DNA of 64,000 nucleotides, from positions 124,001 through 188,000 of the IMG/VR virus record IMGVR_UViG_3300025364_000003; one strand, 5' to 3'. The position numbers and the translations under genes are program-made. Of this stretch, positions 558-58,501 are shown in pieces. Every line of letters starts with the position of its first letter. Positions within the stretch are counted from its first letter, which is position 1. The notes under the pieces are model-generated. The model worked only from the letters and a program-made list of their open reading frames with translations. It was not told the DNA's origin and ran no database searches.

Positions 558-563
558 TACTTA
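558..563 (+). promoter_or_regulatory. putative late-promoter motif TACTTA (representative of a family; see findings)
   Basis: ACCTACTTAA upstream of AGGAG RBS and ATG 581; same motif recurs before over 20 structural genes. Confidence 0.6.
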
Positions 564-580
564 AAGCGTAGGAGTAAAGA

Positions 581-1036
581 ATGACAGTACCACCAAACCC
601 ATTACAGGCTCACGAGACTTTCCAATACAGAAAAGCAGGCCAAGCAAGTGTTCTTGAATATATGGCTAGCGGATTGCCTTATGTGACGCAATCTAGCGTG
701 GGAACAACTCCTGAAAAAATTGAGTTTCCTTTTGTTACAAAGTTTTTTACTGTGAAGAATACTAGTGCAAATGACCTTCATGTTGGCTTCACAGAAAATG
801 GAGTTCAGGGCACGAATAGATTCACCCTTTCTACCAGTGAGTCTTTTACTGGCGATATTCGAATCAGAGATCTGTATCTGCAATCAGCTGGTGGCACAGC
901 CGATTTCGAGATCATTGCCGGACTAACCGGTATTCTACGCAGAGATTTCTTTATTTTAACCGGTTCTTTCGTTGGTTTTAGTGGAAGTCAGCAAGATTTT
1001 GGTTATCGTGCATTTGGTTATGACGGAATAGGATAA
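581..1036 (+). CDS. hypothetical virion protein (beta-rich)
   Basis: RBS AGGAG, late motif, Ser/Thr/Gly-rich beta-type composition. Confidence 0.65.
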   Translation: MTVPPNPLQAHETFQYRKAGQASVLEYMASGLPYVTQSSVGTTPEKIEFPFVTKFFTVKNTSANDLHVGFTENGVQGTNRFTLSTSESFTGDIRIRDLYLQSAGGTADFEIIAGLTGILRRDFFILTGSFVGFSGSQQDFGYRAFGYDGIG

Positions 1037-1085
1037 TTTAAACATATGACCTCTGATTGTCTAAACTTATCTAAGGAGTTTAGAC

Positions 1086-1931: not shown

Positions 1932-1933
1932 AA

Positions 1934-3619
1934 TTAACGAATTCCGCTTCCCTCTTCAGCTTCAAGCTCGTTAGGTTTTCTAACGAGCTTTTTCTTTTCT
2001 ATATCATGACCCTTCACTTGTCCGACGTCTCTTAAATCGAACCCTGGCATTAGTGCAATTTTTTGCTTTGGAAAGCTTCCTCTTGCATTTGCATAACATG
2101 CTTGTCCAACAATCTCGGTAAAGGCTGCTGGAATTGCTTTTTTGGGCAAGAGTTTAGCATGTGCATTGAAAGCGGCCACTTCCCCTTTGTCACTAAAATC
2201 CACATTAGCCAAGATGTGAACAATATAATCATGAACAGCTCTAAACTTCAGATTTTGTTCAGGTGTAAACACATCATGTTGATTATAATCAGTTGATATT
2301 TTCAAAACGCCAGTTTTTTTAACTTCTTCGGACATTTCTTTCTGCGAATTATAAGGTTGCCCAGGAACAAACTCAACCTTTACCTTGGAAAGCATTCTCT
2401 GATACATTTTCTCAATATGTGAGATTAGTGCTTTATACGATGCAACAGCCTCAGGATCATAATCTGGGAGTTCATCATATGCATCTGCTACTAACTCACA
2501 ATATTTCTTGTAATTTGATAGAACCATTTTTTCTTGCAGGTGTCGGTCAAATCTTGCCTGGCTTTCATTTAGAGAATTGTGGACAACTTTGCCTGAGCGC
2601 TTATCAACAACCTTGAAATTGGGACTCCAAAATTTGGAGTAATCTGAAATGAATTGCTGCGGAAGGTTCCCATAGACAAGCTCAAGCACTTGTCCACGTC
2701 CTAAAACGATGGCAACAATTTTGTTTCGACCACTGAAACCAACTGGTTCTGTAATTCTTAAGGTTGTTTGCAGGCGCCACTCATCTTCTTTTGGAGGGAG
2801 CGCAAATTTTCTATATCTTTGTGAAAGCTTATCAAGAGCTTGTAAAAACTTCTTTTCTCCTTCTATAACATTAAATGTAGGGATTTCATTTTTCTGGTAC
2901 ATTTCTTGTGCAATTTCTCTAGCCTTTTCCCAATCCATCTTTTGTTCTAGGGCGTATTCATACGATTCAATATAGGCTTGCTTCGCCCTACCTTTCTTCA
3001 TGTCAACGTGACCCAAAACTCTTTCCATGGCTGCATCGAAAGTGTCTTGCATCATCGCCTTGTCCATTGGCATTTTTTCACTTGTCTTGAGTTTGTTATG
3101 CAAATTTGTGGCGAAGTCGGACATAAGTTCTTTATAAAAATTTGGGTCAGCATCAATGGTGCCTTTGGCCATTGGCACCGCTAAATCTAAATCTCTAGCA
3201 CCAAAATGTGAGCGTAACGCTTCTGCGAATGCTCGTTGTACAGGCATACGAACATCGTCTTCATCTGCTTTGGCAGATTGGGGCACGAGCTGAGCTACAA
3301 CAATCATCATTCGGCTTTCGCCACCAGTTGACATGGCATCTCTAGCAGAGCTATAGGCAGTTACAATGTTGTCAGTCCAATAGCTACCTTTCAGGGAATG
3401 CATTGACGGGCTTAGAATGGAACTCGCTTCAAGTTCTTCTTCGCCTTTCCAGCGACCTTCGGTTGGGTCTGGAATCATTCCGAGTTGGTAAATTTTTGGC
3501 AGATGTTTTGAACTTGTCCCGTGATACATTATCACGGGTTTTGCCCTCTTCCGCTCAAGAAGAAAATCAACTTCTTCTTTTACCAGTTTTTTGATGATAT
3601 TTTTGAGGTTATCGTTCAC
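1934..3619 (-). CDS. putative internal head polyprotein: leader + ADP-ribosyltransferase-fold domain + second conserved domain
   Basis: Leader LKNIIKKLVKEEVDFLLE; MYHGTS..L..I...G..P...GSYWT ART-like motif; second domain with FRAVHDYIVH...GE..AF..H...FTEIVGQ after SLNE/HLQE sites. Confidence 0.6.
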   Translation of the reverse strand: MNDNLKNIIKKLVKEEVDFLLERKRAKPVIMYHGTSSKHLPKIYQLGMIPDPTEGRWKGEEELEASSILSPSMHSLKGSYWTDNIVTAYSSARDAMSTGGESRMMIVVAQLVPQSAKADEDDVRMPVQRAFAEALRSHFGARDLDLAVPMAKGTIDADPNFYKELMSDFATNLHNKLKTSEKMPMDKAMMQDTFDAAMERVLGHVDMKKGRAKQAYIESYEYALEQKMDWEKAREIAQEMYQKNEIPTFNVIEGEKKFLQALDKLSQRYRKFALPPKEDEWRLQTTLRITEPVGFSGRNKIVAIVLGRGQVLELVYGNLPQQFISDYSKFWSPNFKVVDKRSGKVVHNSLNESQARFDRHLQEKMVLSNYKKYCELVADAYDELPDYDPEAVASYKALISHIEKMYQRMLSKVKVEFVPGQPYNSQKEMSEEVKKTGVLKISTDYNQHDVFTPEQNLKFRAVHDYIVHILANVDFSDKGEVAAFNAHAKLLPKKAIPAAFTEIVGQACYANARGSFPKQKIALMPGFDLRDVGQVKGHDIEKKKLVRKPNELEAEEGSGIR

Positions 3620-3634
3620 CCTGATAAATATGAA

Positions 3635-4646: not shown

Positions 4647-4711
4647 GCTAACTCCTTGGTTTAATATAGCATGCCTTGTTTAAAAACAAATCGATAAACT
4701 ATAGAGTAATT

Positions 4712-5011: not shown

Positions 5012-5022
5012 CAGAGGTAAAT

Positions 5023-5493
5023 ATGACAAAGCAGGTGATTATTATAGGAGTTACGGGCCATCGAAAGCTTGATCACGATAAAGATGTTGTTAAAGAAGTG
5101 ATACGTGAAAAGTTACATCAATATGAGGCTGATGCAGTTGTCACTGGAATGGCACTTGGGTTTGATATGTTAGTAGCTGAAGTGTGCCTAGAAGAAACTA
5201 TTCCATTTGTTGCGGCTATACCATGCAAAGACCAAACAAAATTATGGCCGCCACATGAGAAAATACGTTGGACCGAGTTGATGAAAAAAGCTTGGAAATA
5301 TAAAATTGTTTCACCTGGGCCTTTTGAGACTTGGAAACTTTTTGAAAGAAATCGTTGGATTGTTGATCGTTCAAATATTATGTTGAGCTATTGGAATGGG
5401 GTACCCAAAGGAGGAACAGCGGCAACAGTTAAAGAAACCAAGAAATCTAAACGCCCTCACGAGAACCTGTATCCTCTTTGTGAATCCAGGTAA
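5023..5493 (+). CDS. YspA/DUF1273-like SLOG family nucleotide-binding protein
   Basis: IGVTGHR, GMALGFD, AIPC..Q...W, RNRWIVD.S, YWNG..GGT motifs. Confidence 0.85.
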   Translation: MTKQVIIIGVTGHRKLDHDKDVVKEVIREKLHQYEADAVVTGMALGFDMLVAEVCLEETIPFVAAIPCKDQTKLWPPHEKIRWTELMKKAWKYKIVSPGPFETWKLFERNRWIVDRSNIMLSYWNGVPKGGTAATVKETKKSKRPHENLYPLCESR

Positions 5494-5863: not shown

Positions 5864-5923
5864 TTATTCTTATAATAAATAGTCGTTTGTTTTAGAGTCC
5901 CACCTCTAATTAAAAGAGGAGCG

Positions 5924-6853: not shown

Positions 6854-6897
6854 AACAAATACCAGCGGTGAGAATAGACTAATTACTTCAGGTTACA

Positions 6898-7560
6898 ATG
6901 TCCATCTACGAAAAATATATCAAACAACTTATCGAAGAAGAGATCAATCGAAGTCTTCTTGAACAGGATTTGCCAGTTGAAGAACCGGCAGACACGCCTG
7001 CTGATGTTCCGGCACCCGATGCTGGTGCAGCGGGCGAAGCCGGGGCTCCAGAGGCCGGTGGAGAGGAAATTGATTTAGACATTGGTGCTGAAGGCGGCGA
7101 TATAGATTTGGACGTTGGAGGCGCTGCTGGGGGGCTCGAAGGAGGAGAACTGGGTGGCGATCTTGAGGACACTGAAGGCGTCGAGGGAGAAGAAGGGCTT
7201 GATGTAGCAGGTGGTGGTTTTGGAGGAGGCTTTGGCGGTGGTGGATTCTCTTTTGGAAGCGATGGCGAACCAGGACTGACTCCCGATGATGAAGAGGAGG
7301 CAGACACCGTTACAACTGTTGGTCCAGAAGATGTTGAAATCCCAGATGACCCATATATGGCCATTACTGACGAGGCAATCAATTTACTAAAAACAACTCG
7401 TCAGCCTGAGGTTATTCTAAAATCAGTTAAATCATCAATTCAGAGATATTTTGATGAATTTGATGATGCAACACCAGTAATTAAAACATTGTGGGATACT
7501 GAAGACATTACTCTTCGAGACGTTGCGAGAAGATTGCTTCTATTTATCAAAGGAAAATAG
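6898..7560 (+). CDS. acidic Gly-rich leader-bearing protein (putative head core/scaffold-like)
   Basis: Leader YIKQLIEEEINRSLLE; low-complexity D/E/G/A middle. Confidence 0.7.
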   Translation: MSIYEKYIKQLIEEEINRSLLEQDLPVEEPADTPADVPAPDAGAAGEAGAPEAGGEEIDLDIGAEGGDIDLDVGGAAGGLEGGELGGDLEDTEGVEGEEGLDVAGGGFGGGFGGGGFSFGSDGEPGLTPDDEEEADTVTTVGPEDVEIPDDPYMAITDEAINLLKTTRQPEVILKSVKSSIQRYFDEFDDATPVIKTLWDTEDITLRDVARRLLLFIKGK

Positions 7561-7895: not shown

Positions 7896-7928
7896 ACTTT
7901 ACTATTTATCCTCACAAAGGAACTGACA

Positions 7929-8306: not shown

Positions 8307-8327
8307 ATTGACCTACTTATAGCTGTT

Positions 8328-8535: not shown

Positions 8536-11247
8536 ATGCCAGCATTCGATTCAACACCAGAAGGCATTTTGATTAATGAGGACGGCACAAAACTTGCTGT
8601 CTCTGAAAGTCAAACCATCAACACTTCATCGCAACCTGCGTTGTTGTTGGGCGCTCTTCGCCCAGATGGAACAGCAACTTTTGTTAATCTAGCAGATGAT
8701 GGCGCACTCAAAATTTCTATTTCGGGCTCCGGATTGCTACCTTCCATTTCAAGCTCTACAGACAATGCAGTTGTTCGTTGGGATGGAACTACTGGCACCG
8801 CTATTCAAAATTCAAATGCAACTTTGTCAGATGCAGGAACCCTTTCTCTGGTTGGAGATTTGAACATTGCTGGCAACCTGAATGCAGTGGTCGGAGGAGA
8901 TTTAACAGGTTCTTTACCAACACCACAAGTCATTGCCTTTACTTCAGGCGCTACGCAGATCACGTTTGACAACATAATGGACGGTGAAATACTTCAACGA
9001 GTCGGTGATTTGATTGTTAGTATCTCGACTTCTTCATTTGGCGGTGGCGCAGTTGATTCGGTTTTTGGTAGAACTGGTGCAGTTGTTGCGGTTGCTGGGG
9101 ACTACAGCGGCTCACAAGTTACCTTTGTGCCTTCTGGCGACATTGCCGCAACGGATGTTCAAGCAGCAATTGTGGAGGTAAGAGACGACACTGATACCAA
9201 GCTTGCTGGAAAGGTAGACACAAGTACACAAATTATTGCAGGTGCTGGGCTAACAGGCGGTGGCGATCTTACAACAGATCGCACACTGGATGTGGTGGCA
9301 AATGGTGATGGCAGCATTGTCGTTAACGCCAATGATATTCAGGTCGGTGTTGTTTCTGATGCACAACATGGTAGCAGGGGTGGCGGTACGCTACATTCAG
9401 AAGCTACAACTTCTGTAGCTGGTTTTTTTGCTGCGGCAGATAAAGAAGCTCTGAACATAGTTGTAACATCATCATTGAACTTTGTCACCGGACCAGCATC
9501 TGCAACAGACAATGCTCTTGTTAGATGGGATGGAACAACAGGCAAACTTGTTCAAAACTCAAATGCCATTTTGACAGACGGCGGCTCTCTTTCAATTGTT
9601 GGCGATGTAAATGTTACTGGTAATTTAAATGCTTCTGTAAGTGGAGACTTGCAGGGTACACTTCCAAGTCCTCAGGTCATCGCCTTTACTTCTGGTTCAA
9701 CACAAATTTCTTATGACAATATTCCTGAGGGAACATTCTTGAGAAGAAGTGGCTCGTTTGTCATTGGAGATACGGTTACCTCAATTATTACTTCCTCTTC
9801 AGGCATTTCCGTTGTTGATTCTGTTGGCGGAACTGCACTTGCATCAACCCCGTCTTGGACTGACGTTCCATTAAACTTTACCAACGCAAAATCAGATGAT
9901 TTCAGCCACACGGAACCATCTTCAACCGTTCTTGTTAATACGACTGGAAGCTATCTTGTAGGTGGACATGTTACCATCTTCCAAAATGGCGGCAATGGGC
10001 GTTCCGCTGCTGAAATTAGGCTGGTAAAAAACACTGGCGATGGTTTTACCGAGGTAAGTGGAACACGTGGTGCAATTTATAGCAGATTAAATTCTCAAGG
10101 CGAAGGAACAGCTGGATTTACCGTGTTTTTGAATTTGCCGACTACGGCAAGTTTCAAGTTGCAAGCTAGAAAAATAAGCGGAGCGGGCAATCTCTTTTTA
10201 AGAGAAGATGGTTCTGGCCTTACCATTGTAAATACCCGTGGTGTAAAAGGAGAAAGAGGAGAAAAAGGATCGGCAGGTTCGGGAACTACAATAAATGTCA
10301 ACAATCAAGGCTCCCCAGTTTCTGGAACTCCGTTTGACCTTCTTAATTTTAATTTTGGGTTTACTGTTGCAGATGGTGGTGGAGGCGAGGTAGATATCGA
10401 GGTGGATGATTCTGGCACGCTTTCAAGCGTTGAAGCTGGTGATACATCGATAGATGGCACAGCTGATGGCTTTGCTCGCAAAGATCACCAACATGCAGTT
10501 TCTACTGGAACACCAAGTACAATTATTCCTGATCAGGCCAACGCAGAAGGAATCTCAACAAATCTTGCAAGAGCCGACCACATACACAATGTTCCAGCAG
10601 CAGTGCCAGTAGACATCACTCCCGAAGCTGGCAACTCCGAAGGGGTTGCCTCCAGCTTCGCTCGGTCTGACCACGTTCACAACATTCCTTCAGGAACACC
10701 TTCAACAATTACACCAGATCTGCCCAATGCAGAAGGTACGGCAAATTCTTTTGCAAGAACAGATCACATTCATAATGTCCCTACTGATACAGCTGTGGAC
10801 ATAGGTGCAGGTGGAACCTCTATCGAGGGCACGAGCAATTCATTTGCTCGTGCAGATCACGTTCACAGGATCATTGATCCAAGTAGCGAGGCTAGTGCCA
10901 CTGGCAACATTTCAACAACAAGCGCTTCGCCTACAACTGCTGCTGGTATGTCTATTACACCAGGTGCTGGCACTTATTTGGTTTGGTTCAGCACTTGGGG
11001 TTTACACAGCAGAAATTTCGCTGAACTGGCAATTGGAATCGCTGTTGCTGGGACTGATGTTGCAGCAAGTGAGCGAAGATGGGGTAACACCAACCAGAGC
11101 GATGGAGGCAGCGCCACTTTAGCAACGCAGGCTAGAGTAACTATAACAGCAGGCCAGGCTATCCAAGGTAGGTTTTGGAGGGCAAGCGGAGGGGGAAGTG
11201 TTGAAATAAATGATAGAACATTGACAATTCTAAAGGTGGACGGATAA
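8536..11247 (+). CDS. fibre protein with duplicated module and five ARxDHxH repeats
   Basis: Two TDNA.VRWDGTTG..QNS modules, VDSVFGRTGAV fibre motif, short collagen-like GVKGERGEKG, ARxDHxH x5. Confidence 0.8.
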   Translation: MPAFDSTPEGILINEDGTKLAVSESQTINTSSQPALLLGALRPDGTATFVNLADDGALKISISGSGLLPSISSSTDNAVVRWDGTTGTAIQNSNATLSDAGTLSLVGDLNIAGNLNAVVGGDLTGSLPTPQVIAFTSGATQITFDNIMDGEILQRVGDLIVSISTSSFGGGAVDSVFGRTGAVVAVAGDYSGSQVTFVPSGDIAATDVQAAIVEVRDDTDTKLAGKVDTSTQIIAGAGLTGGGDLTTDRTLDVVANGDGSIVVNANDIQVGVVSDAQHGSRGGGTLHSEATTSVAGFFAAADKEALNIVVTSSLNFVTGPASATDNALVRWDGTTGKLVQNSNAILTDGGSLSIVGDVNVTGNLNASVSGDLQGTLPSPQVIAFTSGSTQISYDNIPEGTFLRRSGSFVIGDTVTSIITSSSGISVVDSVGGTALASTPSWTDVPLNFTNAKSDDFSHTEPSSTVLVNTTGSYLVGGHVTIFQNGGNGRSAAEIRLVKNTGDGFTEVSGTRGAIYSRLNSQGEGTAGFTVFLNLPTTASFKLQARKISGAGNLFLREDGSGLTIVNTRGVKGERGEKGSAGSGTTINVNNQGSPVSGTPFDLLNFNFGFTVADGGGGEVDIEVDDSGTLSSVEAGDTSIDGTADGFARKDHQHAVSTGTPSTIIPDQANAEGISTNLARADHIHNVPAAVPVDITPEAGNSEGVASSFARSDHVHNIPSGTPSTITPDLPNAEGTANSFARTDHIHNVPTDTAVDIGAGGTSIEGTSNSFARADHVHRIIDPSSEASATGNISTTSASPTTAAGMSITPGAGTYLVWFSTWGLHSRNFAELAIGIAVAGTDVAASERRWGNTNQSDGGSATLATQARVTITAGQAIQGRFWRASGGGSVEINDRTLTILKVDG

Positions 11248-13215: not shown

Positions 13216-13271
13216 TTGTTTACCTCTATTTACAATTGCTTGTCTGTGATGCAGGTGCAAGGAGATAAATT

Positions 13272-14147: not shown

Positions 14148-14690
14148 ATGTCTAGCGTACCTACCGTTGTAGTACCACCAGGCCCATATCTTTACGACGA
14201 CCCAAGATTCATTTACAACGAACCGTGTATGTTTTACGACGGTGGGTTCGACTTACAATGTTTAATTGATCGGCAACGTGTAGTTCTTCCCAAAAAGGTG
14301 GGAAAAAGCACTGCTGCCGTAGCAAGAAGGCGCAAGCCACAACTTCCACCAGAAGATTGTCGCACGATACTCGATTTTATCATTAGAGCCGAGGTTGAAA
14401 AGGTAAACAATAAGCCGGTGGAACATAGAGAAGTTGAAAAAAAATATCACCTCGAATACGACCCAATTAAAGTTGAAGTACAAGAATTGAAGCATCGAGC
14501 AGATGATTTTGAGGTCTGGGCCTATGCTTTAACATCATCTATAGTCCAACCTAAAATCTGTCCAACAGATAAAGTAAAACTTATCCCAATTAAAACCATT
14601 GTATCAAGTTCACTCGAAGCACGATTAAGGAAGTCGAAGATTCTAATTAAGGGTGAAGTTATTGATAGAAAGAATAAAAACAAGAAATGA
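14148..14690 (+). CDS. hypothetical protein
   Basis: GGAGG RBS; ORF track. Confidence 0.7.
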   Translation: MSSVPTVVVPPGPYLYDDPRFIYNEPCMFYDGGFDLQCLIDRQRVVLPKKVGKSTAAVARRRKPQLPPEDCRTILDFIIRAEVEKVNNKPVEHREVEKKYHLEYDPIKVEVQELKHRADDFEVWAYALTSSIVQPKICPTDKVKLIPIKTIVSSSLEARLRKSKILIKGEVIDRKNKNKK

Positions 14691-15837: not shown

Positions 15838-16139
15838 GTTTCGATAATTAGTTTCTTCTCTTCGGTCAAATCTTTTCTACCCACCTTACAAGCTTCAACA
15901 ATTGTTTTCATTGTTTCTTGATTTTCTATTTCAAGTGCAAGAAGATAAACAAGATAAAGTAATTGACGTTGTCCAGTTACCCCAAATCTTTTAATTTCTT
16001 GTACAATTTGTCGGCATTCATTTCTTTTTTGTGGAGAAAGAGTTAGTTCAAGATCTGGTTTGATGTATTCCACACCTTCTTCTGCTTCGTCTTCGTCGGT
16101 TAAGAATTTATCAAAACCTTCCTTTTCATTATTTGTCAT
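15834..16139 (-). CDS. hypothetical protein
   Basis: GAGG RBS; ORF track. Confidence 0.7.
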   Translation of the reverse strand: MTNNEKEGFDKFLTDEDEAEEGVEYIKPDLELTLSPQKRNECRQIVQEIKRFGVTGQRQLLYLVYLLALEIENQETMKTIVEACKVGRKDLTEEKKLIIET

Positions 16140-16205
16140 TTTTGAACCTCATCTGCTACTTAAGCATGGTAAAATATTTTCAGAAAGTGTAATCGGAGTT
16201 CTATA

Positions 16206-19725: not shown

Positions 19726-19775
19726 GATTATCTATACTATTTAACTGTGAAATTGCAACTCAGGCCGGAGAAAAT

Positions 19776-21071: not shown

Positions 21072-21556
21072 CGAAAAATAAAAGACTCTCTGTGCAAGAA
21101 CAAGACCAAACTGGAGTTGACGCTGCGGTCGCCCGTGGACAAAATCAAGTTCCTGATGATAAGTTTGAAGAGTTCAAAACCACGATGTCGAGGTTGTACC
21201 AGGCGACACAACAAATTGGTGGAGGCACTGCCGGCTCGGCGCCGACAGCGGCGGCTGGACAGACACAACCACCAAGACAAACTGGCGCTCCGTCAGCAAC
21301 AGGTACGCCTGGTCAGACCCAAAGGGGTGGTTCACAACCTCAAGGTCGTCAAACACCTTTGGAACAACAAATACAACAAAGTATTAGCCAGCCTGCCAAC
21401 GTTCAAGGATTTGTCGAAATAAAAAGAGACGCATCTGATGCGGCATTGACCCATATAGCAAGGCAATTAGGCGTAGAAGAAGATCGGCTCAAGAAACTTG
21501 CAATTGATGCAGACGTTAGGTTGTTAATCAATCCTGATCTTCTTAGGGTCCAGTGA
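21068..21556 (+). CDS. hypothetical protein with Q/T/G/P linker
   Basis: ATGA coupling, GGAG RBS. Confidence 0.7.
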   Translation: MTKNKRLSVQEQDQTGVDAAVARGQNQVPDDKFEEFKTTMSRLYQATQQIGGGTAGSAPTAAAGQTQPPRQTGAPSATGTPGQTQRGGSQPQGRQTPLEQQIQQSISQPANVQGFVEIKRDASDAALTHIARQLGVEEDRLKKLAIDADVRLLINPDLLRVQ

Positions 21557-23024
21557 ATTTTACAAAGCCTGAACTTGTCATAAGGAGCATAATAGCTTTG
21601 CCGGCGAGCATTATACCACCGATGCTGCTAATTGCAGGAACTTTTTGAACCTTTTCTTGTTTGAGCCTCTCGCTAAAGTTTGCGAACACCTTTTTAAAGA
21701 AATGTTCAATTTCTTCATCGTTAATGGGTGCCGTTGTGAATTCCTCACAAAAATATTTTAATTCATTAACTAAATTTACTGTACCATAATGAAGCATTGT
21801 TTTGATCTGTCTCAAAGCAATATCAATTTTAACTCTTTGTTCATCATTTTTTGTAGATGATAAATTTGGCAAGTGAACCAAAACAGAATTTGATACCAGT
21901 GAACGGAGTCGTTTGTCAAACAACTCTTGCACTTCTTCGTGCAAAAAATAATTCTGCCTTTTTTGAAGGATAGATTGAGCTTGGGAAGCAACTGCTGCTC
22001 TCGTGCTTCCGTTTTCGATTGTGCATTCGTTCGAATCTAATCTCACTCGTTCTACCAAGGGCAGTTCATCATATTTTGTAAAAACAACAAGGTCACCTTT
22101 CATGGATGAAACAGGTAAAGAACCACAAACTACCGCAATATCATTGACAATGTTTAGCGAATCAATATCGGAAGGCACTCGCACAGGTTGCACGTCAAGT
22201 AATCCTCGCTCCTGGTTTGCTTTTAAAGTTGCGACGACCTCTTCAGAAAAACCATGAGCAATTATTACCATTGGTATTTTTGTTTCCAAACACTTTGTTA
22301 GTAGATGATCGATTTCTGAAACTTTCTCGACTAATCCATCTACAACTAAAAGCTTACAATTACGGCGTTCCCAGGTATTTTTTTCGAGCATAAATTTGAA
22401 TGGCTTCAATTGAAAAGTGTAGCCTTCTTTTAGTTCAATAAAAAAGTTATCTTGCCGACCATTTTCTACGAAAATGCGACCTTCAAGACCAGCAAGATTT
22501 AAAGCTTCCCAAATGGCTTGAGCCAGAACTTTGTCGGACCCGCAAATTTTATCAACAACATCACGAATGTTGTTAGGGCTAGGAATCGAGGAGTTTTTTT
22601 CAACCTGATTTTTAAATTGATCTACAACTTTATCGAATTGCTGTAGCAAAATTTGGGCATTGGTTTTTTCCATTGAAGTTTTGATCATTTCATTGACAAG
22701 CGTCACTCCGAACAAATAAGCTATATTCGCTCCACCGGCCGAAAGAAGTTCAGACTGGTAACATGACTTGAAAAGTGTAGAAGCCAATGCACGGGTTGTT
22801 CTGTCCGCTGGAGCGAGCTTTTTAAGAAGCTTTCCAATGAAATGGTAGCTGTCCTTTTCAAGAGGGTACAAGTCTTCATGGAGAATTAAATTTATTTTTG
22901 AGTATAACGAATCAATATTGTTGATTCCTGAAAATAACTCTCTGTGAACTTGTTCCTGTGGAATAAATGTGGTTGCTGTCTTCATATTTAATAAATGTAA
23001 ACTCTTTAGAGTAGAAGGTATCAA
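21543..23024 (-). CDS. degenerate GroEL/Cpn60-like chaperonin (start probably 22985)
   Basis: Apical-domain signature LLVVDG.VE.VSEI.HLL......PMVIIA.GFSEEVVATL..N...DIAVVCG; GDGTTT motif absent. Confidence 0.75.
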   Translation of the reverse strand: MIPSTLKSLHLLNMKTATTFIPQEQVHRELFSGINNIDSLYSKINLILHEDLYPLEKDSYHFIGKLLKKLAPADRTTRALASTLFKSCYQSELLSAGGANIAYLFGVTLVNEMIKTSMEKTNAQILLQQFDKVVDQFKNQVEKNSSIPSPNNIRDVVDKICGSDKVLAQAIWEALNLAGLEGRIFVENGRQDNFFIELKEGYTFQLKPFKFMLEKNTWERRNCKLLVVDGLVEKVSEIDHLLTKCLETKIPMVIIAHGFSEEVVATLKANQERGLLDVQPVRVPSDIDSLNIVNDIAVVCGSLPVSSMKGDLVVFTKYDELPLVERVRLDSNECTIENGSTRAAVASQAQSILQKRQNYFLHEEVQELFDKRLRSLVSNSVLVHLPNLSSTKNDEQRVKIDIALRQIKTMLHYGTVNLVNELKYFCEEFTTAPINDEEIEHFFKKVFANFSERLKQEKVQKVPAISSIGGIMLAGKAIMLLMTSSGFVKFTGP

Positions 23025-26141: not shown

Positions 26142-26191
26142 ATGTTAGTGATGATAAGACTAAAAGAAGCCTTGAATGGTAATTACCGAGT

Positions 26192-26923
26192 GTGATAGAC
26201 GATAGCAACAAATACGGTCGAAATAGGAATCTATGGCGCAGGGTTTATAGTTTTAGGAGACGCAAACCTGTCAACACTCAATTGGTTGATGCTGAAACAG
26301 GTGTGACTTTCTCCTATGATCTTCAGCAAATCTTGCGGCATAGAGATTATTTTATTATTAAGACCACTGCCACTGCTTCAGCTGTTATTCCGCCCATACC
26401 ACCTCCGTTACTCCTGGGAGAATACGATGAGGGTTTGGTGTTCTTCAACAATACAGATTCGGCAGTTGCTTCGTTTGATACTTGTTTTTCTGACACCCCC
26501 GATGCGGTTGTTCTTTCGGTAGAGCCAAGCCCTAATAATGATGATTTTATAATTCCGTATGGTATTACTTTTAATTCATGTTCAATGAGTATTGGGTTGT
26601 CGGCGCCTTATAGTGGTGCGGTTAGATATCGAGCAGTTTATTCTTCAACAGGTTACCCCATCAATGTCACCAGTTCGCTTGTGCCAGCCTCGGGTACATT
26701 TCAAGTTTCAGCTGGACACATTACAGCTTCGCAGGCAACGGAATTTACGGCAAGTCATCCTTCGGGCGGAAGCTTGGACTTTTTTGCCAAAACAGCCTGG
26801 GACTTTTTTGGCAACTTTGACAATAACGTATTTATATCAGAAGACAATGCAACCAGCACATCAACTTCAGGATCAATATCAGCGCCACTTAGCAATCCAA
26901 TATATTTCATAGCATTCTTTTGA
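26192..26923 (+). CDS. putative virion protein
   Basis: TAATTA motif 6 nt before GTG; Ser/Thr-rich beta composition. Confidence 0.7.
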   Translation: MIDDSNKYGRNRNLWRRVYSFRRRKPVNTQLVDAETGVTFSYDLQQILRHRDYFIIKTTATASAVIPPIPPPLLLGEYDEGLVFFNNTDSAVASFDTCFSDTPDAVVLSVEPSPNNDDFIIPYGITFNSCSMSIGLSAPYSGAVRYRAVYSSTGYPINVTSSLVPASGTFQVSAGHITASQATEFTASHPSGGSLDFFAKTAWDFFGNFDNNVFISEDNATSTSTSGSISAPLSNPIYFIAFF

Positions 26924-26955
26924 AGAACTATTTACCCTAGTCAAGGAACGTAATA

Positions 26956-36047: not shown

Positions 36048-36073
36048 GTTCTTAAATATATAAAACCTACTTA

Positions 36074-39134: not shown

Positions 39135-39165
39135 AAAAAAGCCCCCGATTACGGGGGCTTTTTTT
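39133..39165. terminator. bidirectional rho-independent terminator
   Basis: A-run GCCCCCG-ATTA-CGGGGGC T-run between convergent genes. Confidence 0.9.
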
Positions 39166-40617: not shown

Positions 40618-40923
40618 CAAGGATTATGTCTATCTTTCGTATCTGATGTGAAGTCAAGCTCCGGAAACATCATTATAGAGTAAAAGAAGCACTGTTCCTT
40701 GCGAGTGAAATTCGTTGGGAGAATATAGAACGTTGGTCAATTTGAAGTTGTATGTATTTGCAAATACAAATAAGTGATGTCTTTTAATAAAAATCCCGGA
40801 TTGTCTCTATAGAATACAAGATCCATTTTTGGCTGTAAACCAAATAATATCAAGAAAGACCGACAATAATCCTGCAAAATTTGAGATTACTACTTATGCT
40901 TAAGTTTACCAGGACCGGAACCA

Positions 40924-43975: not shown

Positions 43976-44013
43976 AACAATATACTTAAGACCAACGCAG
44001 TAAAGGTAAAAAC

Positions 44014-45517: not shown

Positions 45518-45544
45518 ATTTTCATCCTAATTATCTCTGATGCT

Positions 45545-46828: not shown

Positions 46829-46982
46829 GGGACAAACGTATCCTTTCATATAACCTATGAGTGCAAAGCTCAAAAATATAAAGGGTTACAAAGTTGATTT
46901 GGAAGGCAAGAATTAATTTCTTGCATTGGGTTAGTAGCTCTACTTATCAGTAGTTTATTATGATTAATGTTTGGATTAATAA

Positions 46983-48854: not shown

Positions 48855-48905
48855 ATTCTAAATAACCTCTTGGCCTACCTAATTATTGCTGAGAGGTAGG
48901 TCACC

Positions 48906-51091: not shown

Positions 51092-51735
51092 GTGCAACCG
51101 GAAGAAAAAAACACAACTCTAAAGGGAAGGCCGAAGAACGTGATCCTTTCGATTATTATCCTACGCCAAATTGGTGCATAAAACGCTTTGTAGAAAAAGC
51201 ATCGCACAGGTTGCCAGTTGGTAATTGGATTGAACCAGCAGCTGGCGATGGCGCAATCATACGTTCTATCACCTCTTATGGTAAGGGATATGAGAAAGTT
51301 CAATGGACTTCGGTTGAAATTCAAGATAGATTTAAAGAATCGCTTGAGGAAGTATCTGATAAAGTTTGTATTGGAAATTTTGCGTCTTATTTACATCCAG
51401 GCTCAAAAGCCGACGTGTGCATTACCAATCCTCCATACAAACTTGCTGAGTCAATGATTAAACATGCACAGACTCAGGCTAAATCCGTTGTTATGTTGTT
51501 GCGAATTAACTTTTTGGCAAGTGAAAAAAGACGTGATTGGATGGAACAAGATACTCCTGACATTTATGTTATTCCAAATCGTCCTTCGTTTCGTGGTAAA
51601 GGTTCTGACGCTACTGAATATGCTTGGTTTGTGTGGGACGATAAATCGTGTGGTAGAATTTTCATACTCGATTCAACGCCTCGGGGCGTGCGACAAGCAG
51701 AAAAGAAGGCTTTGAGACAAAAGCAAACTATTTAA
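51088..51735 (+). CDS. DNA N6-adenine methyltransferase
   Basis: DYYPTP, IEPAAGDGAI (SAM motif I), ITNPPY (motif IV), YAWFVW. Confidence 0.9.
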   Translation: MSATGRKKHNSKGKAEERDPFDYYPTPNWCIKRFVEKASHRLPVGNWIEPAAGDGAIIRSITSYGKGYEKVQWTSVEIQDRFKESLEEVSDKVCIGNFASYLHPGSKADVCITNPPYKLAESMIKHAQTQAKSVVMLLRINFLASEKRRDWMEQDTPDIYVIPNRPSFRGKGSDATEYAWFVWDDKSCGRIFILDSTPRGVRQAEKKALRQKQTI

Positions 51736-54017: not shown

Positions 54018-54086
54018 CAATTCTCTATTGTCTAAACAATTATTTCTAAAATGCGTTCGACGTGGGTTTACTTACTATTTACCCAT

Positions 54087-55304: not shown

Positions 55305-55385
55305 GAAGATTTCTCCTCAGGTGGTGTCTAATTAGTTAGGAGTATACTGACAAATTGCCTCAGGTAATGGTAAAAGGAACGGAAC

Positions 55386-58300
55386 ATGGTTAGCCAAATT
55401 TTTAACTTTCCAGGCTTCTTCGATAGAGAAATCGATCTAACAGCCCAGATTCAGGAGCCAGTAGGCGTTCCAGCTGGTGTAATTGGTGGTGCCGAACGTG
55501 GTCCGGCATTCGTCCCATTCACTGTTGGATCATTTGCTGATTTCCGAACTCGCTTCGGCGATCTAAATCCAAGATATGCTGCGCCATACGCAGTCGATAG
55601 ATTCCTGGAAAACAGGACAGCACTTACCTTCATCAGAATTCTTGGTGCGGGTGCCAATGAGACGTCAAGTGATATCGAGACAACTCGTTTGCAAGGAACA
55701 GTCAAAAATGCTGGATTCCGTCTAAGTGGAACTCTCAGTTCCGTTAACCCAGCTACTACTAATGGTGCTGTTCAATTCCTCGTCGCTCGCCACGTTGTTA
55801 CTGCTTCAGAAGCACTCGGAATGCCGATGTTTTCTGACAATAATTCACTTCTTACCTCGGGTTCGAACGACGAGGTTTACCTTACTCGTGGTGTTATTTT
55901 CGCTGCGTCAGGTACTCGAATTCAAATTCTAAATGGAGATGACAGCAACGAGCAGTACAGCAGCTTTGTTGATGACGTTGCAACTGTAAACTCTGCAAGC
56001 AGAGAATTCAAAATTGTTATTTCTTCATCGGCTGGTGCGTCGTTTGGCAATGACGACGGATTCCCTGGCGTTAGAATTCTAACCGCTTCTCTGAATCCAA
56101 GTTCTGATAACTACTTTGCCAAGCTGATGAATACTGATCCAGAAAGGTTCAGCGACGAAAAACATGTGGTCTATGCTGATTATGCAGTCGATGCCGAACT
56201 CGCAAATGTTGGCACTGGAAGCGGCGATGTTGCTATTGCAAGCGGTAGCATTAACACTTCTTCTACTTCTGGCAACACCTCTCTTCCATTCCTAGAGGCG
56301 TTCGGTCGTTTTGACACCAGATTCACAACTCCAAAAACACCTTGGTTTATCTCGCAACCATATGGCAAAACTGAGTATGACCTCTTTTACATTGAAGCTG
56401 TTGATGATGGCGCATACGCAAATCAGCGTTTCAAGATTTCTATCACCAATCTTCTCAAGTCTTCAAATGTTCGTGATAAACACGGAACTTTCACACTTGT
56501 TGTAAGAACATTTGATGATACAGATGCCGAACCACAGATTCTTGAGCAGTTCAACAACCTTTCTCTTGATCCGGATTCGGACAACTACATTGCTAAGGTT
56601 ATTGGAGATAAGCGTGCTCGCTTCAACTTTGACGCTGAAGCTGAAGAAGATCGTCGCCTTCTCACCACTGGCAAGTTTGAAAACAGAAGCCGATACATTC
56701 GAGTATTTGTTTCTGACCAGGTAGCACAAAAGAAGATTCCTGAAGATGCTGTTCCATTCGGCTTCCGAGGAACTGCTCCATTGAGCACCAACTCACTTCT
56801 TTCTGATACTGCTGGGTCGGCGGCCCTAGCAAGACTTGCTTTGTCGGGTGCAACTGATCCACGTCTTGCGTGGTCTATAGTACCTCCTCTTCCATACCGT
56901 TATAAGGTAACAAGAGGAAATGCAGCAACCAATCCGGGTTTCGAAGGTGCTCCAGGAGCAACCGAATTAACTGATGCACGTTATTTTTGGGGGGTCAAGA
57001 CTTCTAGAAACACCAACGCACTGAATCCAAACATTGTCAATCTTCCAAACCAGTTGGTCAACAGCTACACTAAGTTTGCAGGTATTGAAAAACTTGATGT
57101 ACTTGTTACAGGTTCAGCTAAAGATGATTTCAACAACAATAAGTTTACGCTTGCTCGTGTTGCGCTAGGAAATGCATCACTCAATGATGTTACATCATCA
57201 GCCGCAATCCACATGAAAGAAGCTGCTTATCTTCGTAACAGAACGCCAGATGGGTTCGAATACAAGATAACTGATGAAATTTCTGGTCTGGATAGAATTA
57301 CATTTGCCACCCTTTACCAAAAGGGCACGTCTGCTGCCGACTTCAACAAGTTCACCAACTTTGCAAAGTTTACCTCTATTCTATATGGTGGTTTCGATGG
57401 CGTCAACATTCTTGATAAGAATGCAGCTACATTTAATGACCGTTCCACTTCAACAGAAACTGCTGGAAGCGAGGTTGGAAATGCAGCATCTACTTTCACT
57501 TCACCTGGACTTAACGAGAACGTAAACGGATTTGGTACTTCAAACCAGACTGTTTTCGCTTATCGAAGAGCTTCAGAGATTATCACTGATGCAATCGCAT
57601 CTAACATCAATCTGCTTACTATTCCAGGTCAGCGTGATCCGTTGGTCACAGACTTTGCTGCTGATGAAGTTCGTGACTTTGGTCTTGCTTTCTATGCCAT
57701 GGATTTACCAGCATATGACTCTGATGGTAACAGAATTTGGGACAATCAAACTTCAAGATTTATCGACATCGAACAGACTGCAAATAACTTTGAGCAGCGT
57801 GCTCTTGACAATGAGTTTGCAGGTGCTTACTTCCCAGATTTCGTACTTGAGGATGATGTAAACAGGCGCAGAGTAACCGTTCCAGCTTCTGTTGGAGCAC
57901 TTGCAGCACTTGGATTCAATGACCGTGTTGCTTATCCTTGGTTCGCACCAGCAGGCTTCAACAGAGCAGCTCTTGATTTTGTACAGCTTACAAAGACAAG
58001 AATTAAGCAACCAGAACGTGAACGTCTTTTTGACATTCACATTAACCCAATCGTCAAATTCCCTGGCGAATCTGGTTTCGTAATCTTCGCACAAAACACG
58101 CTTGAACAAGCCGAGTCTGCGCTCGGCAGTATCAATGTTGTTCGAATGTTGAATGAACTCAAGCGCAGGATAATCGAGATTGGCAACCGAGCAATCTTCG
58201 AACAGATTACTCCGGAAATTTACACTGAACTTGATAGGAGATTCCGCAGCGTTCTTAACCTCATTTCGGCTCGTGCTGGTATTGAGAGATTTGATGTCAT

Positions 58301-58445
58301 CGTTGATGGCAGAAACAATACAAACCTTGATCGTGAGAACAATAGAGTCAATGCTCGAATTGTGCTCGTTCCAACGAGGGCGGTTGAGTTCATTGCAATT
58401 GACTTCATCATTACTAGAAGCGGCGTGTCGTTCGATGCCGTATAA
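55386..58445 (+). CDS. tail sheath protein 1 (T4 gp18-like)
   Basis: PGF..REIDL, AGVIG.AERGPAFVP, GGFDG, YFP, PWFAPAGFNR, INPIV.F, INV.R, P.RAVEFI.IDF. Confidence 0.93.
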   Translation: MVSQIFNFPGFFDREIDLTAQIQEPVGVPAGVIGGAERGPAFVPFTVGSFADFRTRFGDLNPRYAAPYAVDRFLENRTALTFIRILGAGANETSSDIETTRLQGTVKNAGFRLSGTLSSVNPATTNGAVQFLVARHVVTASEALGMPMFSDNNSLLTSGSNDEVYLTRGVIFAASGTRIQILNGDDSNEQYSSFVDDVATVNSASREFKIVISSSAGASFGNDDGFPGVRILTASLNPSSDNYFAKLMNTDPERFSDEKHVVYADYAVDAELANVGTGSGDVAIASGSINTSSTSGNTSLPFLEAFGRFDTRFTTPKTPWFISQPYGKTEYDLFYIEAVDDGAYANQRFKISITNLLKSSNVRDKHGTFTLVVRTFDDTDAEPQILEQFNNLSLDPDSDNYIAKVIGDKRARFNFDAEAEEDRRLLTTGKFENRSRYIRVFVSDQVAQKKIPEDAVPFGFRGTAPLSTNSLLSDTAGSAALARLALSGATDPRLAWSIVPPLPYRYKVTRGNAATNPGFEGAPGATELTDARYFWGVKTSRNTNALNPNIVNLPNQLVNSYTKFAGIEKLDVLVTGSAKDDFNNNKFTLARVALGNASLNDVTSSAAIHMKEAAYLRNRTPDGFEYKITDEISGLDRITFATLYQKGTSAADFNKFTNFAKFTSILYGGFDGVNILDKNAATFNDRSTSTETAGSEVGNAASTFTSPGLNENVNGFGTSNQTVFAYRRASEIITDAIASNINLLTIPGQRDPLVTDFAADEVRDFGLAFYAMDLPAYDSDGNRIWDNQTSRFIDIEQTANNFEQRALDNEFAGAYFPDFVLEDDVNRRRVTVPASVGALAALGFNDRVAYPWFAPAGFNRAALDFVQLTKTRIKQPERERLFDIHINPIVKFPGESGFVIFAQNTLEQAESALGSINVVRMLNELKRRIIEIGNRAIFEQITPEIYTELDRRFRSVLNLISARAGIERFDVIVDGRNNTNLDRENNRVNARIVLVPTRAVEFIAIDFIITRSGVSFDAV

Positions 58446-58501
58446 GATGAGCCAGGCAAATAGTTACATAGAAAGATTAGTCGACTAATCGGAGAGAATT
58501 C

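What the first reader, a model, noticed from the sequence alone, without database searches (positions are those of the whole stretch)
558..58466. Window-wide TA(C/T/A)TTA late-promoter-like motif, often only 5-12 nt before the start codon
Seen: TANTTA, usually preceded by C, at 558, 3625-30(-), 5018-23(-), 5907, 6880, 7903, 8314, 13227, 14644, 16157, 19738, 22985, 26180, 26929, 36068, 40891, 43983, 45528, 46941, 48880, 51729, 54076, 55329 and 58461 (TAGTTA). Each lies just upstream of a structural, leader-bearing or nearby gene, with no obvious -35 box. At 3619, 5011, 8328, 26192, 51743 and 54087 the start codon is 5-8 nt away with little or no Shine-Dalgarno, implying leaderless or near-leaderless mRNAs. 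Known: T4 late promoters are a lone -10 element (TATAAATA) read by gp55. Inference: a different late-sigma specificity, independently grouping the leader-tagged enzymes with virion genes. Caveat: a 6-mer in AT-rich DNA needs a statistical test.
Basis: partly seen in the sequence, partly recalled or inferred. Interest (0 to 1): 0.65.

Follow-up and report, generated by a model that had tools for sequence, protein, structure and literature searches.

The report
Late promoter motif of huge phage
The short sequence TA(T/A/C)TTA, usually preceded by C, is a real and evolutionarily conserved promoter-like signal in front of the virion genes of a 461-kb phage; it is most likely read by a phage-encoded relative of the T4 late sigma factor gp55, but no RNA data exist to prove it.

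Summary
All 24 listed sites exist, and 18 are preceded by C. In the 60 nt upstream of 75 window genes, TA[ACT]TTA occurs 25 times against 8.6±2.7 in dinucleotide shuffles (z 6.1). CTA[ACT]TTA occurs 14 times against 1.7 (z 8.9). Control AT-rich hexamers, including TATAAT, are not enriched. An unbiased hexamer scan ranks TAATTA and TATTTA first.

The motif is strand-specific, has no -35 partner, and is concentrated at strand switches and operon starts. It precedes the genes for sheath, tube, major capsid protein, prohead protease and adaptor.

It is conserved upstream of the sheath gene in all 14 relatives, down to 46% protein identity. It is the top upstream hexamer in two related phage records. 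It also recurs as TATTTAT before structural operons of cultured Flavobacterium and Microcystis phages.

These phages share a roughly 240-270-aa divergent sigma factor that weakly matches the T4 gp55 family. I found this gene in the window's own phage, 26.6 kb beyond the 206-kb record.

Best explanation: a -10-only late promoter read by a gp55-family sigma, a new variant of the T4 late-promoter scheme. Leaderless mRNAs are plausible at about ten sites. No RNA data exist, so transcription start sites remain untested.

The parts
169..174 (+).
558..563 (+). C-TACTTA, 17 nt before ATG 581 (151 aa), SD in between; the ortholog in G001 and G002 also has the motif
3625..3630 (-). TATTTA, 5 nt before GTG 3619 (561 aa); no room for an SD; the start is pinned by the N-terminal peptide leader; leaderless candidate
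5018..5023 (-). TATTTA, 6 nt before ATG 5011 (99 aa, peptide leader MKLEELKKLIRETV); leaderless candidate
5876..5881 (-).
5907..5912 (.). C-TAATTA (palindromic core) in a divergent intergenic region; 11 nt before GTG 5924 / 20 nt before ATG 5933
6880..6885 (.). C-TAATTA, 12 nt before ATG 6898 (220 aa, peptide leader) and 26 nt before ATG 6853 of the divergent (-) gene
7541..7546 (+).
7903..7908 (+). C-TATTTA, 20 nt before ATG 7929 (107 aa, peptide leader)
8314..8319 (+). C-TACTTA, 8 nt before ATG 8328; lies just after a terminator-like hairpin and T-run
13227..13232 (+). C-TATTTA, 39 nt before GTG 13272 (patatin-like phospholipase)
14644..14649 (+). C-TAATTA inside the end of gene 14148-14690, 37 nt before ATG 14687; possible internal promoter, weaker case
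15845..15850 (-).
16157..16162 (+). C-TACTTA, 43 nt before ATG 16206 (DUF3008 / DnaJ-zinc-finger protein)
19738..19743 (+). C-TATTTA, 32 nt before ATG 19776 (431 aa), at a strand switch
22985..22990 (+). A-TATTTA, 40 nt before ATG 23031; lies in the 5' end of the divergent gene; the G002 ortholog also has the motif
26180..26185 (+). G-TAATTA, 6 nt before GTG 26192; weak case
26929..26934 (+). C-TATTTA, 21 nt before ATG 26956 (1463 aa); the G001 ortholog also has the motif
36053..36058 (-). TATTTA, 5 nt before ATG 36047 (219 aa); back to back with the site at 36068; leaderless candidate
36068..36073 (+). C-TACTTA, abutting ATG 36074 (847 aa); the true start may lie further downstream
40891..40896 (+). 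C-TACTTA, 27 nt before ATG 40924 (656 aa)
43983..43988 (+). A-TACTTA, 25 nt before ATG 44014 (285 aa)
45528..45533 (.). C-TAATTA in a 27-nt divergent intergenic region: 11 nt before ATG 45545 (adaptor-like, 427 aa) and 10 nt before ATG 45517 (-); candidate bidirectional element; the G001 and G002 orthologs have the motif
46941..46946 (+). C-TACTTA, 36 nt before ATG 46983 (153 aa, peptide leader)
48859..48885 (.). TATTTA(-) at 48859-48864, 4 nt before ATG 48854; plus C-TAATTA at 48880-48885, 25 nt before ATG 48854(-) and 83 nt before GTG 48969(+). In L009 the motif sits at a different position in this spacer
51729..51734 (+). C-TATTTA overlapping the stop codon of the upstream gene, 8 nt before GTG 51743; conserved in L009, but the start codon is uncertain
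54076..54081 (+). C-TATTTA, 5 nt before ATG 54087. In L009 it reads C-TACTTA with the same 5-nt gap, while the upstream flank is unalignable; best leaderless candidate
55329..55334 (+). C-TAATTA, 51 nt before ATG 55386 (tail sheath 1); TA[ACT]TTA is present 28-50 nt upstream of this gene in all 14 relatives
58461..58466 (+). A-TAGTTA, 35 nt before ATG 58502 (tail sheath 2); conserved in L009; TAGTTA is a common variant in G002

Best explanation
TA(T/A/C)TTA, with C at -1 in this phage, is the core and probably only sequence element of the phage's late promoters. It is a -10-type box without a -35 partner.

Proposed mechanism. The host's core RNA polymerase is redirected by a phage-encoded, highly divergent sigma factor of the T4 gp55 family. 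This is a 267-aa protein encoded 26.6 kb beyond the right end of the 206-kb record, in the 461-kb assembly of the same phage. The sigma binds the box through its sigma-2-like domain. Transcription would then start a few nucleotides downstream.

Consequences for the mRNAs. Most transcripts would have 10-45-nt leaders with a Shine-Dalgarno. About ten in the window, where the start codon lies 4-8 nt after the box, would be leaderless or nearly so. The palindromic variant TAATTA sits in several divergent intergenic regions and may fire both ways.

Shown: enrichment, strand bias, position, operon-start association, conservation across relatives, and presence of the sigma gene.

Inferred: that the box is bound by this sigma, the start-site position, late timing, leaderless translation and bidirectionality.
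For: Statistics: (z 6.1 and 8.9; top two of all hexamers; 47% of CTA[ACT]TTA copies fall in 4% of positions; sense far exceeds antisense).

No -35 information.

Operon logic: the motif precedes 20 of 31 genes at strand switches, 18 of 51 after same-strand gaps over 15 nt, and 10 of 53 operon-internal genes (p 0.0016). Several sites lie directly after terminator hairpins.

Gene class: sheath; major capsid protein Gp23, tail tube, prohead protease and adaptor-like protein.

Conservation:
- All 14 sheath loci keep TA[ACT]TTA although the flanks diverged.
- L009 (84% aa identity) keeps the site at 54076 with a change at the degenerate position and the same 5-nt gap.
- TATTTA is the top non-SD upstream hexamer in G001 (37 against 11.1 expected) and the top hexamer in G002 (7 against 0.8; antisense 1).
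- Motif presence correlates between G000 and G001 orthologs: 13 of 19 against 7 of 28, p 0.004.
- TATTTAT precedes terL, portal, sheath, tube, TMP and baseplate operons in Flavobacterium phage immuto, and the sheath, tube and other operons in Microcystis phage Mel-JY01.

Sigma:
- The A1 family is present in G001, immuto, Mel-JY01 and LR756508.
- It is present in the window's own phage: E 5e-81 to the A1 profile and 42% identity to the G001 protein.
- phrog_234, the T4 gp55 family, is its only meaningful PHROG hit (E 1.9e-5). It is also the only hit in G001 (E 0.002).
- Sigma70_r2 scores weakly in 7 of 20 family members.
- The AF2 model's top 50 Foldseek and VIA matches are all sigma factors. 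The sigma-2 domain aligns at rmsd 2.2-2.9 Å over about 90 residues, Z 9-11.
- immuto and Mel-JY01 have the motif and the A1 protein but no RpoD-like sigma.
- No phage RNA polymerase was detected.
- G001 has a separate early class, GTGCAAA-N14-15-TGnTATAAT, which shows that the box marks a distinct promoter class.
- The sigma gene itself has no box upstream.
Against: - There are no RNA data of any kind. All runs holding this DNA are DNA metagenomes from a hypersaline lake.
- The gp55 link is weak at sequence level: 26 bits to phrog_234, and hhalign of the A1 profile against T4 gp55 alone is not significant (probability 0.04).
- The A1 protein has a C-terminal domain that T4 gp55 lacks, so a second DNA contact cannot be excluded.
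- No gp33 or gp45 homologue was detected in the three incomplete records.
- The 6-7-bp motif carries only about 11 bits. About half of its copies lie elsewhere in the genome, and some upstream copies must be chance.
- My gene starts come from a home-made caller.
Confidence: 0.68

Rival explanations
1. The box is a promoter, but it is read by the phage's RpoD-like sigma factors. These are two paralogues of 232 and 239 aa at G000 80.1-80.8 kb and 96.3-97.0 kb. They end before the region 4.2 helix-turn-helix, so they cannot read a -35 box.
For: Both proteins have regions 1.2, 2 and 3 but only the first ~18 residues of region 4. A conserved family of 227-237-aa sigmas without region 4 exists. G001 has an orthologue that also lacks the region 4.2 helix-turn-helix. 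A sigma without region 4.2 fits -35-independent initiation.
Against: Regions 2.3-2.4 are nearly identical to primary sigmas (about 65% identity to M. tuberculosis SigA). That predicts TATAAT-type boxes, and extended -10 boxes of the TGnTATAAT type exist as a separate class. TAnTTA cannot be aligned so that both A-11 and T-7 are kept. The complete genomes of immuto and Mel-JY01 use TATTTAT but give no Sigma70_r2 match at all.
Confidence: 0.12
2. The box is a variant -10 (or -7) element read by the host's own housekeeping or alternative sigma, with no phage factor needed.
For: It begins with TA like a -10 hexamer. The host is unknown, so its promoter consensus cannot be checked.
Against: The same core is used by relatives infecting Flavobacterium (Bacteroidota) and Microcystis (Cyanobacteria) and by an uncultured phage from a hypersaline lake. 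There is no -35 or -33 partner. TATAAT is not enriched. The box does not extend to the Bacteroidetes TAnnTTTG. It is concentrated on virion genes.
Confidence: 0.07
3. The motif acts on RNA rather than DNA. It would be an A/U-rich translational enhancer (a ribosomal protein S1 site) or a processing site in front of start codons, especially for the genes without a Shine-Dalgarno.
For: It lies 0-50 nt before start codons. About ten copies sit 4-8 nt before starts that lack an SD. It is U/A-rich.
Against: The letters are fixed (T, A, N, T, T, A plus C at -1) rather than a general AU-rich stretch, and other AT-rich hexamers are not enriched. The distance to the start varies from 0 to 50 nt. The motif tracks operon starts and strand switches rather than every gene. 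It follows terminators directly. Most copies are followed by a normal SD.
Confidence: 0.08
4. Chance: an AT-rich hexamer is simply common in AT-rich spacers.
For: Spacers are AT-rich, and some copies are tails of terminator T-runs.
Against: Dinucleotide-preserving shuffles give z 6-9, while control AT hexamers give z<1. There is a strand bias. The result is replicated in two relatives and two cultured phages. The motif is conserved where the flanks are not.
Confidence: 0.01

Closest known systems
Bacteriophage T4 late promoters (TATAAATA) read by gp55 with gp33 and the gp45 sliding clamp
   Same: A lone -10-type box with no -35. It sits in front of virion genes and close to the start codons. 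It depends on a small phage sigma of the gp55 family acting on host core polymerase. The phage has T4-type virion genes: Gp23 capsid protein, gp20-like portal, gp21-like protease, gp18-like sheath and gp19-like tube. The T4 scheme itself is from established knowledge and from the T4 record's annotation.
   Different: The consensus is TA(T/A/C)TTA, or TATTTAT(A) in relatives. It differs from TATAAATA at positions 4-5, and TATAAA and TATAAT are not enriched. The sigma is 240-270 aa with a further C-terminal helical domain, against 185 aa in T4. Sequence similarity to gp55 is marginal. gp33 and gp45 homologues were not detected.
Sigma factors of 'group 2' jumbo phages (Iyer et al. 2021, PMC7824862)
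   Same: That survey describes gp23-type jumbo phages that lack their own RNA polymerase. They carry two kinds of sigma: a minimal phage type and an RpoD-like type. This phage has both kinds.
   Different: The survey gives no promoter motif for them. Here the RpoD-like copies lack region 4.2, and the 'minimal' one has two domains.
Extended -10 promoters, and sigma70 lacking region 4.2
   Same: Initiation is independent of a -35 box.
   Different: There is no TG at -15/-14 and no TATAAT. TGnTATAAT promoters exist in these phages as a separate class, with a GTGCAAA -35-like box in G001.
phiKZ and AR9 non-virion RNA polymerase late promoters (TATG; AACA-N6-TW)
   Same: These are short late-promoter motifs of jumbo phages without a -35 (PMC7598289, listed).
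   Different: Those are read by phage multisubunit polymerases. No beta or beta' domain was found in G000, G001 or G002, and the motifs are unrelated.

Membership tests
T4-type late transcription (gp55-dependent -10-only promoters) | A single -10-region box with no -35 element | tested here: met
   Position counts from -25 to -2 are flat; only C at -1 carries information. The same holds in G001 and G002.
T4-type late transcription (gp55-dependent -10-only promoters) | Consensus TATAAATA | tested here: not met
   TATAAA and TATAAT are not enriched (z -0.9 each). The motif is TA[ACT]TTA here and TATTTAT(A) in relatives.
T4-type late transcription (gp55-dependent -10-only promoters) | The phage encodes a gp55-family sigma | tested here: met
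   L142:15262-16065(-), 267 aa, lies in the 461-kb assembly of the same phage. Overlaps are 100% between walk loci and 99.97-99.996% to G000. phrog_234 is the only meaningful PHROG hit (E 1.9e-5, 25.9 bits). The similarity is weak: hhalign against T4 gp55 alone is not significant.
T4-type late transcription (gp55-dependent -10-only promoters) | gp33 co-activator and gp45 sliding-clamp activator | tested here: inconclusive
   phrog_254 and phrog_223 give no match in G000, G001 or G002. These records are 45%, 78% and 19% complete, and gp33 diverges fast.
T4-type late transcription (gp55-dependent -10-only promoters) | Drives virion (late) genes | tested here: met
   The motif precedes sheath, tube, Gp23 capsid protein, prohead protease and adaptor-like genes. 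Timing itself was not measured.
T4-type late transcription (gp55-dependent -10-only promoters) | Transcripts start a few nt downstream of the box, late in infection | not testable with these tools
   No RNA run holds this DNA.
Sigma-70 superfamily (for the A1-family protein) | Sigma-2 domain fold and sequence signature | tested here: met
   In the AF2 model (pLDDT 79.5), residues ~19-121 align to sigma-2 domains at rmsd 2.2-2.9 Å over 89-96 residues, Z 9-10. All top 50 matches are sigma factors. Pfam Sigma70_r2 scores only below threshold, in 7 of 20 members.
Canonical sigma70 promoter | TTGACA-like -35 box, 17-bp spacer, TATAAT | tested here: not met
Bacteroidetes sigmaA promoter (-7 TAnnTTTG, -33 TTTG) | TAnnTTTG box | tested here: not met
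   The aligned sites show no TTTG extension. SD motifs are common in this phage.
Jumbo-phage multisubunit RNA polymerase promoters (phiKZ, AR9) | Phage-encoded beta and beta'-like subunits | tested here: not met
   PF00562 and PF00623 give no match in G000, G001 or G002. Caveats: the records are incomplete, and phiKZ-type subunits are very divergent.

The most novel reading that the evidence does not exclude
A large, mostly uncultured clade of aquatic T4-related phages has replaced the T4 late box TATAAATA by TA-N-TTA. The clade runs from 160-kb Flavobacterium and Microcystis phages to this 461-kb phage from a hypersaline lake.

The box would be read by a two-domain gp55-family sigma that needs no -35 box and perhaps no clamp. 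In this phage the system would have three unusual features:
- The base at -1 has co-evolved with the sigma (C here, A in the nearest relatives).
- Start codons are placed 4-8 nt after the box, giving a set of leaderless late mRNAs.
- The palindromic version TAATTA serves as a single box firing in both directions between divergent genes.
Probability: 0.3. Interest if true: 0.7.

Novelty: new variant of a known kind. Interest (0 to 1): 0.58.

Why it matters
This gives a testable promoter code for a widespread but unstudied group of huge aquatic phages. More than 1,800 relatives of the sigma are in public data.

The motif allows late genes to be recognised from sequence alone in genomes where most proteins have no annotation. 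It also flags enzymes, such as a patatin-like lipase, and the 'ELxxLVREAV' leader proteins as co-expressed with the virion.

It pairs a sigma family that had no name in any source with a likely DNA target. That pairing would show how far the gp55-type minimal promoter can drift.

Two cultured relatives, Flavobacterium phage immuto and Microcystis phage Mel-JY01, make the idea directly testable.

Tried and rejected
RNA evidence. The look-up of sequencing runs found only DNA metagenomes (hypersaline lake, microbial mat) and no RNA.

Close relatives in the phage collection. megablast of 8 kb found none.

Locating the sigma gene:
- tblastn and hmmsearch for the A1-family sigma in the 206-kb record found nothing. 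The gene lies outside that record.
- The search for related loci with the single protein, and then with the A1 alignment, did not return the window's own phage.
- The genome search could not open the 461-kb records.
- An exact 30-mer from the end of the record gave no hit in viral contigs.
- One look-up of the walk found no record.

Classifying the sigma:
- The A1 profile against PDB sequences gave no sigma hit.
- hhalign of A1 against T4 gp55 alone gave probability 0.04.
- phrog_12791 gave no match.

Other transcription machinery. gp33 (phrog_254), gp45 (phrog_223), T7-like RNA polymerase (PF00940, whose control also did not ring), beta (PF00562) and beta' (PF00623) all gave no match.

Annotation. 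Pfam and PHROGs left most motif-bearing genes of the window unannotated.

Literature. Searches for TATTTA or TATTTATA phage promoters, Mel-JY01 and Immutovirus gave nothing on promoters.

Sequence features. A -35-like partner or extended -10 TG was looked for and not found. The 'GTTTAC' word seen near some boxes has no fixed spacing, so it was not pursued.

Full report
WHAT THE WINDOW IS

The window is bases 124,001-188,000 of a 206,528-bp IMG/VR virus record. The record has about 42% G+C and is rated 45% complete. The same phage is assembled as 461-kb contigs in several independent samples. The samples are hypersaline-lake metagenomes.

The phage is a distant T4-type myovirus. The window holds two tandem sheath paralogues of about 1,000 aa, a PhoH protein and a GroEL-like protein. 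Just outside it lie a Gp23-type major capsid protein, a tail tube protein, a prohead protease and a portal gene that also matches HNH endonuclease families. Most other proteins match nothing in Pfam or PHROGs.

THE OBSERVATION

All 24 listed coordinates carry TANTTA, and 18 are preceded by C. I built a rough gene model from codon-usage-scored ORFs, choosing starts by Shine-Dalgarno and codon, and tested the motif in three ways.

1. Unbiased hexamer scan. I counted all hexamers in the 70 nt upstream of 255 genes, using the whole record as background. TAATTA (18 against 2.4 expected) and TATTTA (22 against 4.2) rank first and second, ahead of every Shine-Dalgarno word. TACTTA ranks twelfth. TATTTA occurs 22 times in sense and 7 times in antisense.

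2. Dinucleotide-preserving shuffles of the window's 75 upstream stretches.
   - TA[ACT]TTA: 25 observed against 8.6±2.7 (z 6.1).
   - CTA[ACT]TTA: 14 observed against 1.7±1.4 (z 8.9).
   - TATAAT, TAAATA, TATAAA, TTATTA, TAATAA and TTTATA all give z below 1.

3. Position in the genome. Of the 53 CTA[ACT]TTA copies on either strand of the record, 25 lie within 60 nt upstream, in sense, of a predicted start. Only 4% of positions fall there. Several more do so once starts are corrected. The reverse complement TAAATAG scores 3 of 22.

The enrichment is strongest in the window itself. The signal is therefore real, directional and positional.

ANATOMY

- Aligned on the box, positions -25 to -2 carry no information. 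Only -1 does, with C in 24 of 49 sites. There is no -35 partner and no TG of an extended -10.
- The distance from the box to the start codon ranges from 0 to about 50 nt. Most sites have a normal Shine-Dalgarno in between.
- The box tracks places where a promoter is needed. It precedes 20 of 31 genes at strand switches, 18 of 51 genes after a same-strand gap over 15 nt, and 10 of 53 operon-internal genes (p 0.0016).
- Several boxes follow terminator hairpins directly: window 8314, and record positions 194128, 201048 and 203990.
- The palindromic variant TAATTA sits in four short divergent spacers: 5907, 6880, 45528 and 48880.
- Two TATTTA copies, at 39165 and 44919, are only tails of terminator T-runs and are false positives.

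CONSERVATION

- A search with sheath 1 found 14 loci. One is in the 461-kb contig (100% identity), one has 84% identity, and twelve have 46-50% identity. Every one has TA[ACT]TTA 28-50 nt upstream of the sheath start, although the surrounding spacer has diverged. In the relatives the base at -1 is A rather than C.
- In the 84% relative (L009), the box at 54076 reads CTACTTA instead of CTATTTA. That is a change at the degenerate position. The 5-nt gap to ATG is the same and the upstream flank is unalignable. In the spacer at 48880 the box sits at a different position.
- I fetched two related records whole and repeated the unbiased scan. In G001 (267 kb), TATTTA is the top hexamer after the Shine-Dalgarno words (37 against 11.1 expected). 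In G002 (63 kb) it is the top hexamer outright (7 against 0.8; antisense 1), followed by TAGTTA.
- Motif presence correlates between orthologues of G000 and G001: 13 of 19 against 7 of 28, p 0.004. In the small G002 record it does not reach significance.
- In the cultured Flavobacterium phage immuto, TATTTAT(A) precedes the terminase, portal, sheath, tube, baseplate-hub, tape-measure and other operons.
- In Microcystis phage Mel-JY01, A-TATTTAT(A/G)TATG precedes the sheath operon, the tube gene and three further units.
- The same core is thus used in hosts of different phyla, which points to a phage-encoded reader.

WHO READS IT

No phage RNA polymerase domain was found in G000, G001 or G002.

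The RpoD-like sigmas.
- The 206-kb record encodes two RpoD-like sigmas.
- They have regions 1.2, 2 and 3, about 65% identical to M. tuberculosis SigA over regions 2-3. They stop before the region 4.2 helix-turn-helix.
- Similar region-4-less sigmas of 227-237 aa form a family in the protein collection. G001 has one too.
- Their -10-reading residues are almost those of primary sigmas.
- G001 has a separate promoter class, GTGCAAA-N14-15-TGnTATAAT, that would suit them or the host sigma.
- immuto and Mel-JY01 have the TATTTAT boxes but no Sigma70_r2 match at all.

The gp55-like sigma.
- What all these phages share is a protein of about 240 aa, first seen in G001 as a weak Sigma70_r2 hit.
- It has more than 1,800 unnamed relatives in aquatic metagenomes.
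- It has homologues in immuto, Mel-JY01 and the 484-kb uncultured phage LR756508.
- The T4 gp55 family profile, phrog_234, hits exactly this ORF and nothing else in G001 (E 0.002).
- An AlphaFold model has pLDDT 79.5. All of its top 50 Foldseek and VIA matches are sigma factors. Residues ~19-121 superpose on sigma-2 domains at 2.2-2.9 Å. One of these is sigmaE region 2 bound to -10 DNA.

Finding it in the window's own phage. The gene is not in the 206-kb record. I walked the 461-kb assembly by exact-protein look-ups. The walk loci overlap each other at 100% identity and match the record at 99.97-99.996%. At 26.6 kb beyond the record's right end, next to a glycosyltransferase cluster, as in G001 where a glycosyltransferase-like ORF adjoins the gene, lies a 267-aa protein with these properties:
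- It matches the family profile at E 5e-81.
- It is 42% identical to the G001 protein.
- Its only meaningful PHROG hit is phrog_234, at E 1.9e-5.
- It has no TANTTA box upstream, as expected for a gene that must be expressed before the late genes.

MECHANISM PROPOSED

The gp55-family sigma redirects host core polymerase to TA-N-TTA boxes, with initiation a few nt downstream.

From established knowledge of T4, the late box TATAAATA is centred near -10 and transcripts start a few nt after it. If the same spacing holds here, start codons 4-8 nt after the box would give leaderless or near-leaderless mRNAs. In the window these are 3619(-), 5011(-), 8328, 15837(-), 17950(-), 26192, 36047(-), 48854(-), 51743 and 54087.

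For 3619 and 5011 the start codon is independently pinned by a conserved N-terminal peptide ('ELxxLVREAV'). That peptide begins a few residues after the first residue in six proteins. For 54087 the gap is conserved in L009. The GTG starts at 26192 and 51743 are the least secure.

All of this is inference, because no RNA data exist.

COMPARISON WITH WHAT IS KNOWN

In logic this is the T4 late system: a -10-only box, a gp55-family sigma and virion genes. It also fits the 'group 2' jumbo phages, which carry sigmas but no polymerase (PMC7824862). It differs in four ways:
- The consensus differs. TATAAA and TATAAT are not enriched.
- The sigma is larger and has two domains.
- gp33 and gp45 were not detectable.
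- The apparent leaderless set and the palindromic divergent boxes have no T4 counterpart that I know of.

I found no description of this motif in the searchable literature. I therefore rate it a new variant of a known kind.

LIMITS

- Gene starts come from my own caller.
- The motif has low information content, so individual sites may be chance.
- 'Late' rests on gene content alone.
- The sigma-promoter pairing rests on co-occurrence across genomes, not on binding data.

Noticed in passing
G000:C1 about 62,000-98,000 (outside the window; loci L001, L002, L125, L126): A 36-kb island of 50-60% G+C sits in a genome of about 40% G+C. It carries both RpoD-like sigma genes. The identical sigma protein is on 15 contigs, the longest of 461 kb, so the island is probably not an assembly chimera. 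Its origin is unexplained.
   Followed up: partly
L001:1144-1842(-) and L002:1363-2082(+): Two RpoD/SigA-like sigma paralogues end right after 'LRLRF', so they lack the region 4.2 helix-turn-helix. The first Trp of the conserved 'WWIRQ' is replaced by His. A family of such 227-237-aa sigmas without region 4 exists in metagenomes.
   Followed up: partly
window starts 3619(-), 5011(-), 6898, 7575, 7929, 46983; also L139:17404-18132: A shared N-terminal peptide of about 20 aa (consensus roughly ELxxLVREAV) heads otherwise unrelated proteins. It may be a capsid-targeting or propeptide signal. Each of these window genes has the promoter box upstream.
   Followed up: partly
G001 (L111-L116), about 150-260 kb: The relative G001 has a second, very regular promoter class: GTGCAAA, 14-15 nt, TGnTATAAT, in more than 10 copies. 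These are presumably early promoters. Only scattered TGnTATAnT copies occur in the 206-kb record, and one occurs at L140 upstream of the (-) gene at 8567-8854.
   Followed up: partly
window 55386-58445 and 58502-61531: Two tandem tail-sheath paralogues of about 1,000 aa each, conserved as a pair in relatives.
   Followed up: no
G000:C1:112972-116199 (L127:12972-16199): The 1,075-aa ORF matches portal families over residues 591-854 and HNH endonuclease families over residues ~98-290. GIY-YIG and HNH genes are scattered through the structural region.
   Followed up: no
G000:C1 about 5,380-5,470: A 42-nt direct repeat contains a hairpin-like 'aaaggtagcc...ggctaccttt' around a TATTTA box, two copies side by side.
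   Followed up: no
window 21543-23024(-) and G000:C1:122121-123788: Two chaperonin-like genes: a strong GroEL match (E 9e-149) just upstream of the window, and a weak GroEL-like match inside it.
   Followed up: no
L142:16489-21917(-): A glycosyltransferase and sugar epimerase/dehydratase gene cluster lies next to the gp55-like sigma gene in the window's phage. In G001 a glycosyltransferase-like ORF also sits beside the sigma gene.
   Followed up: no
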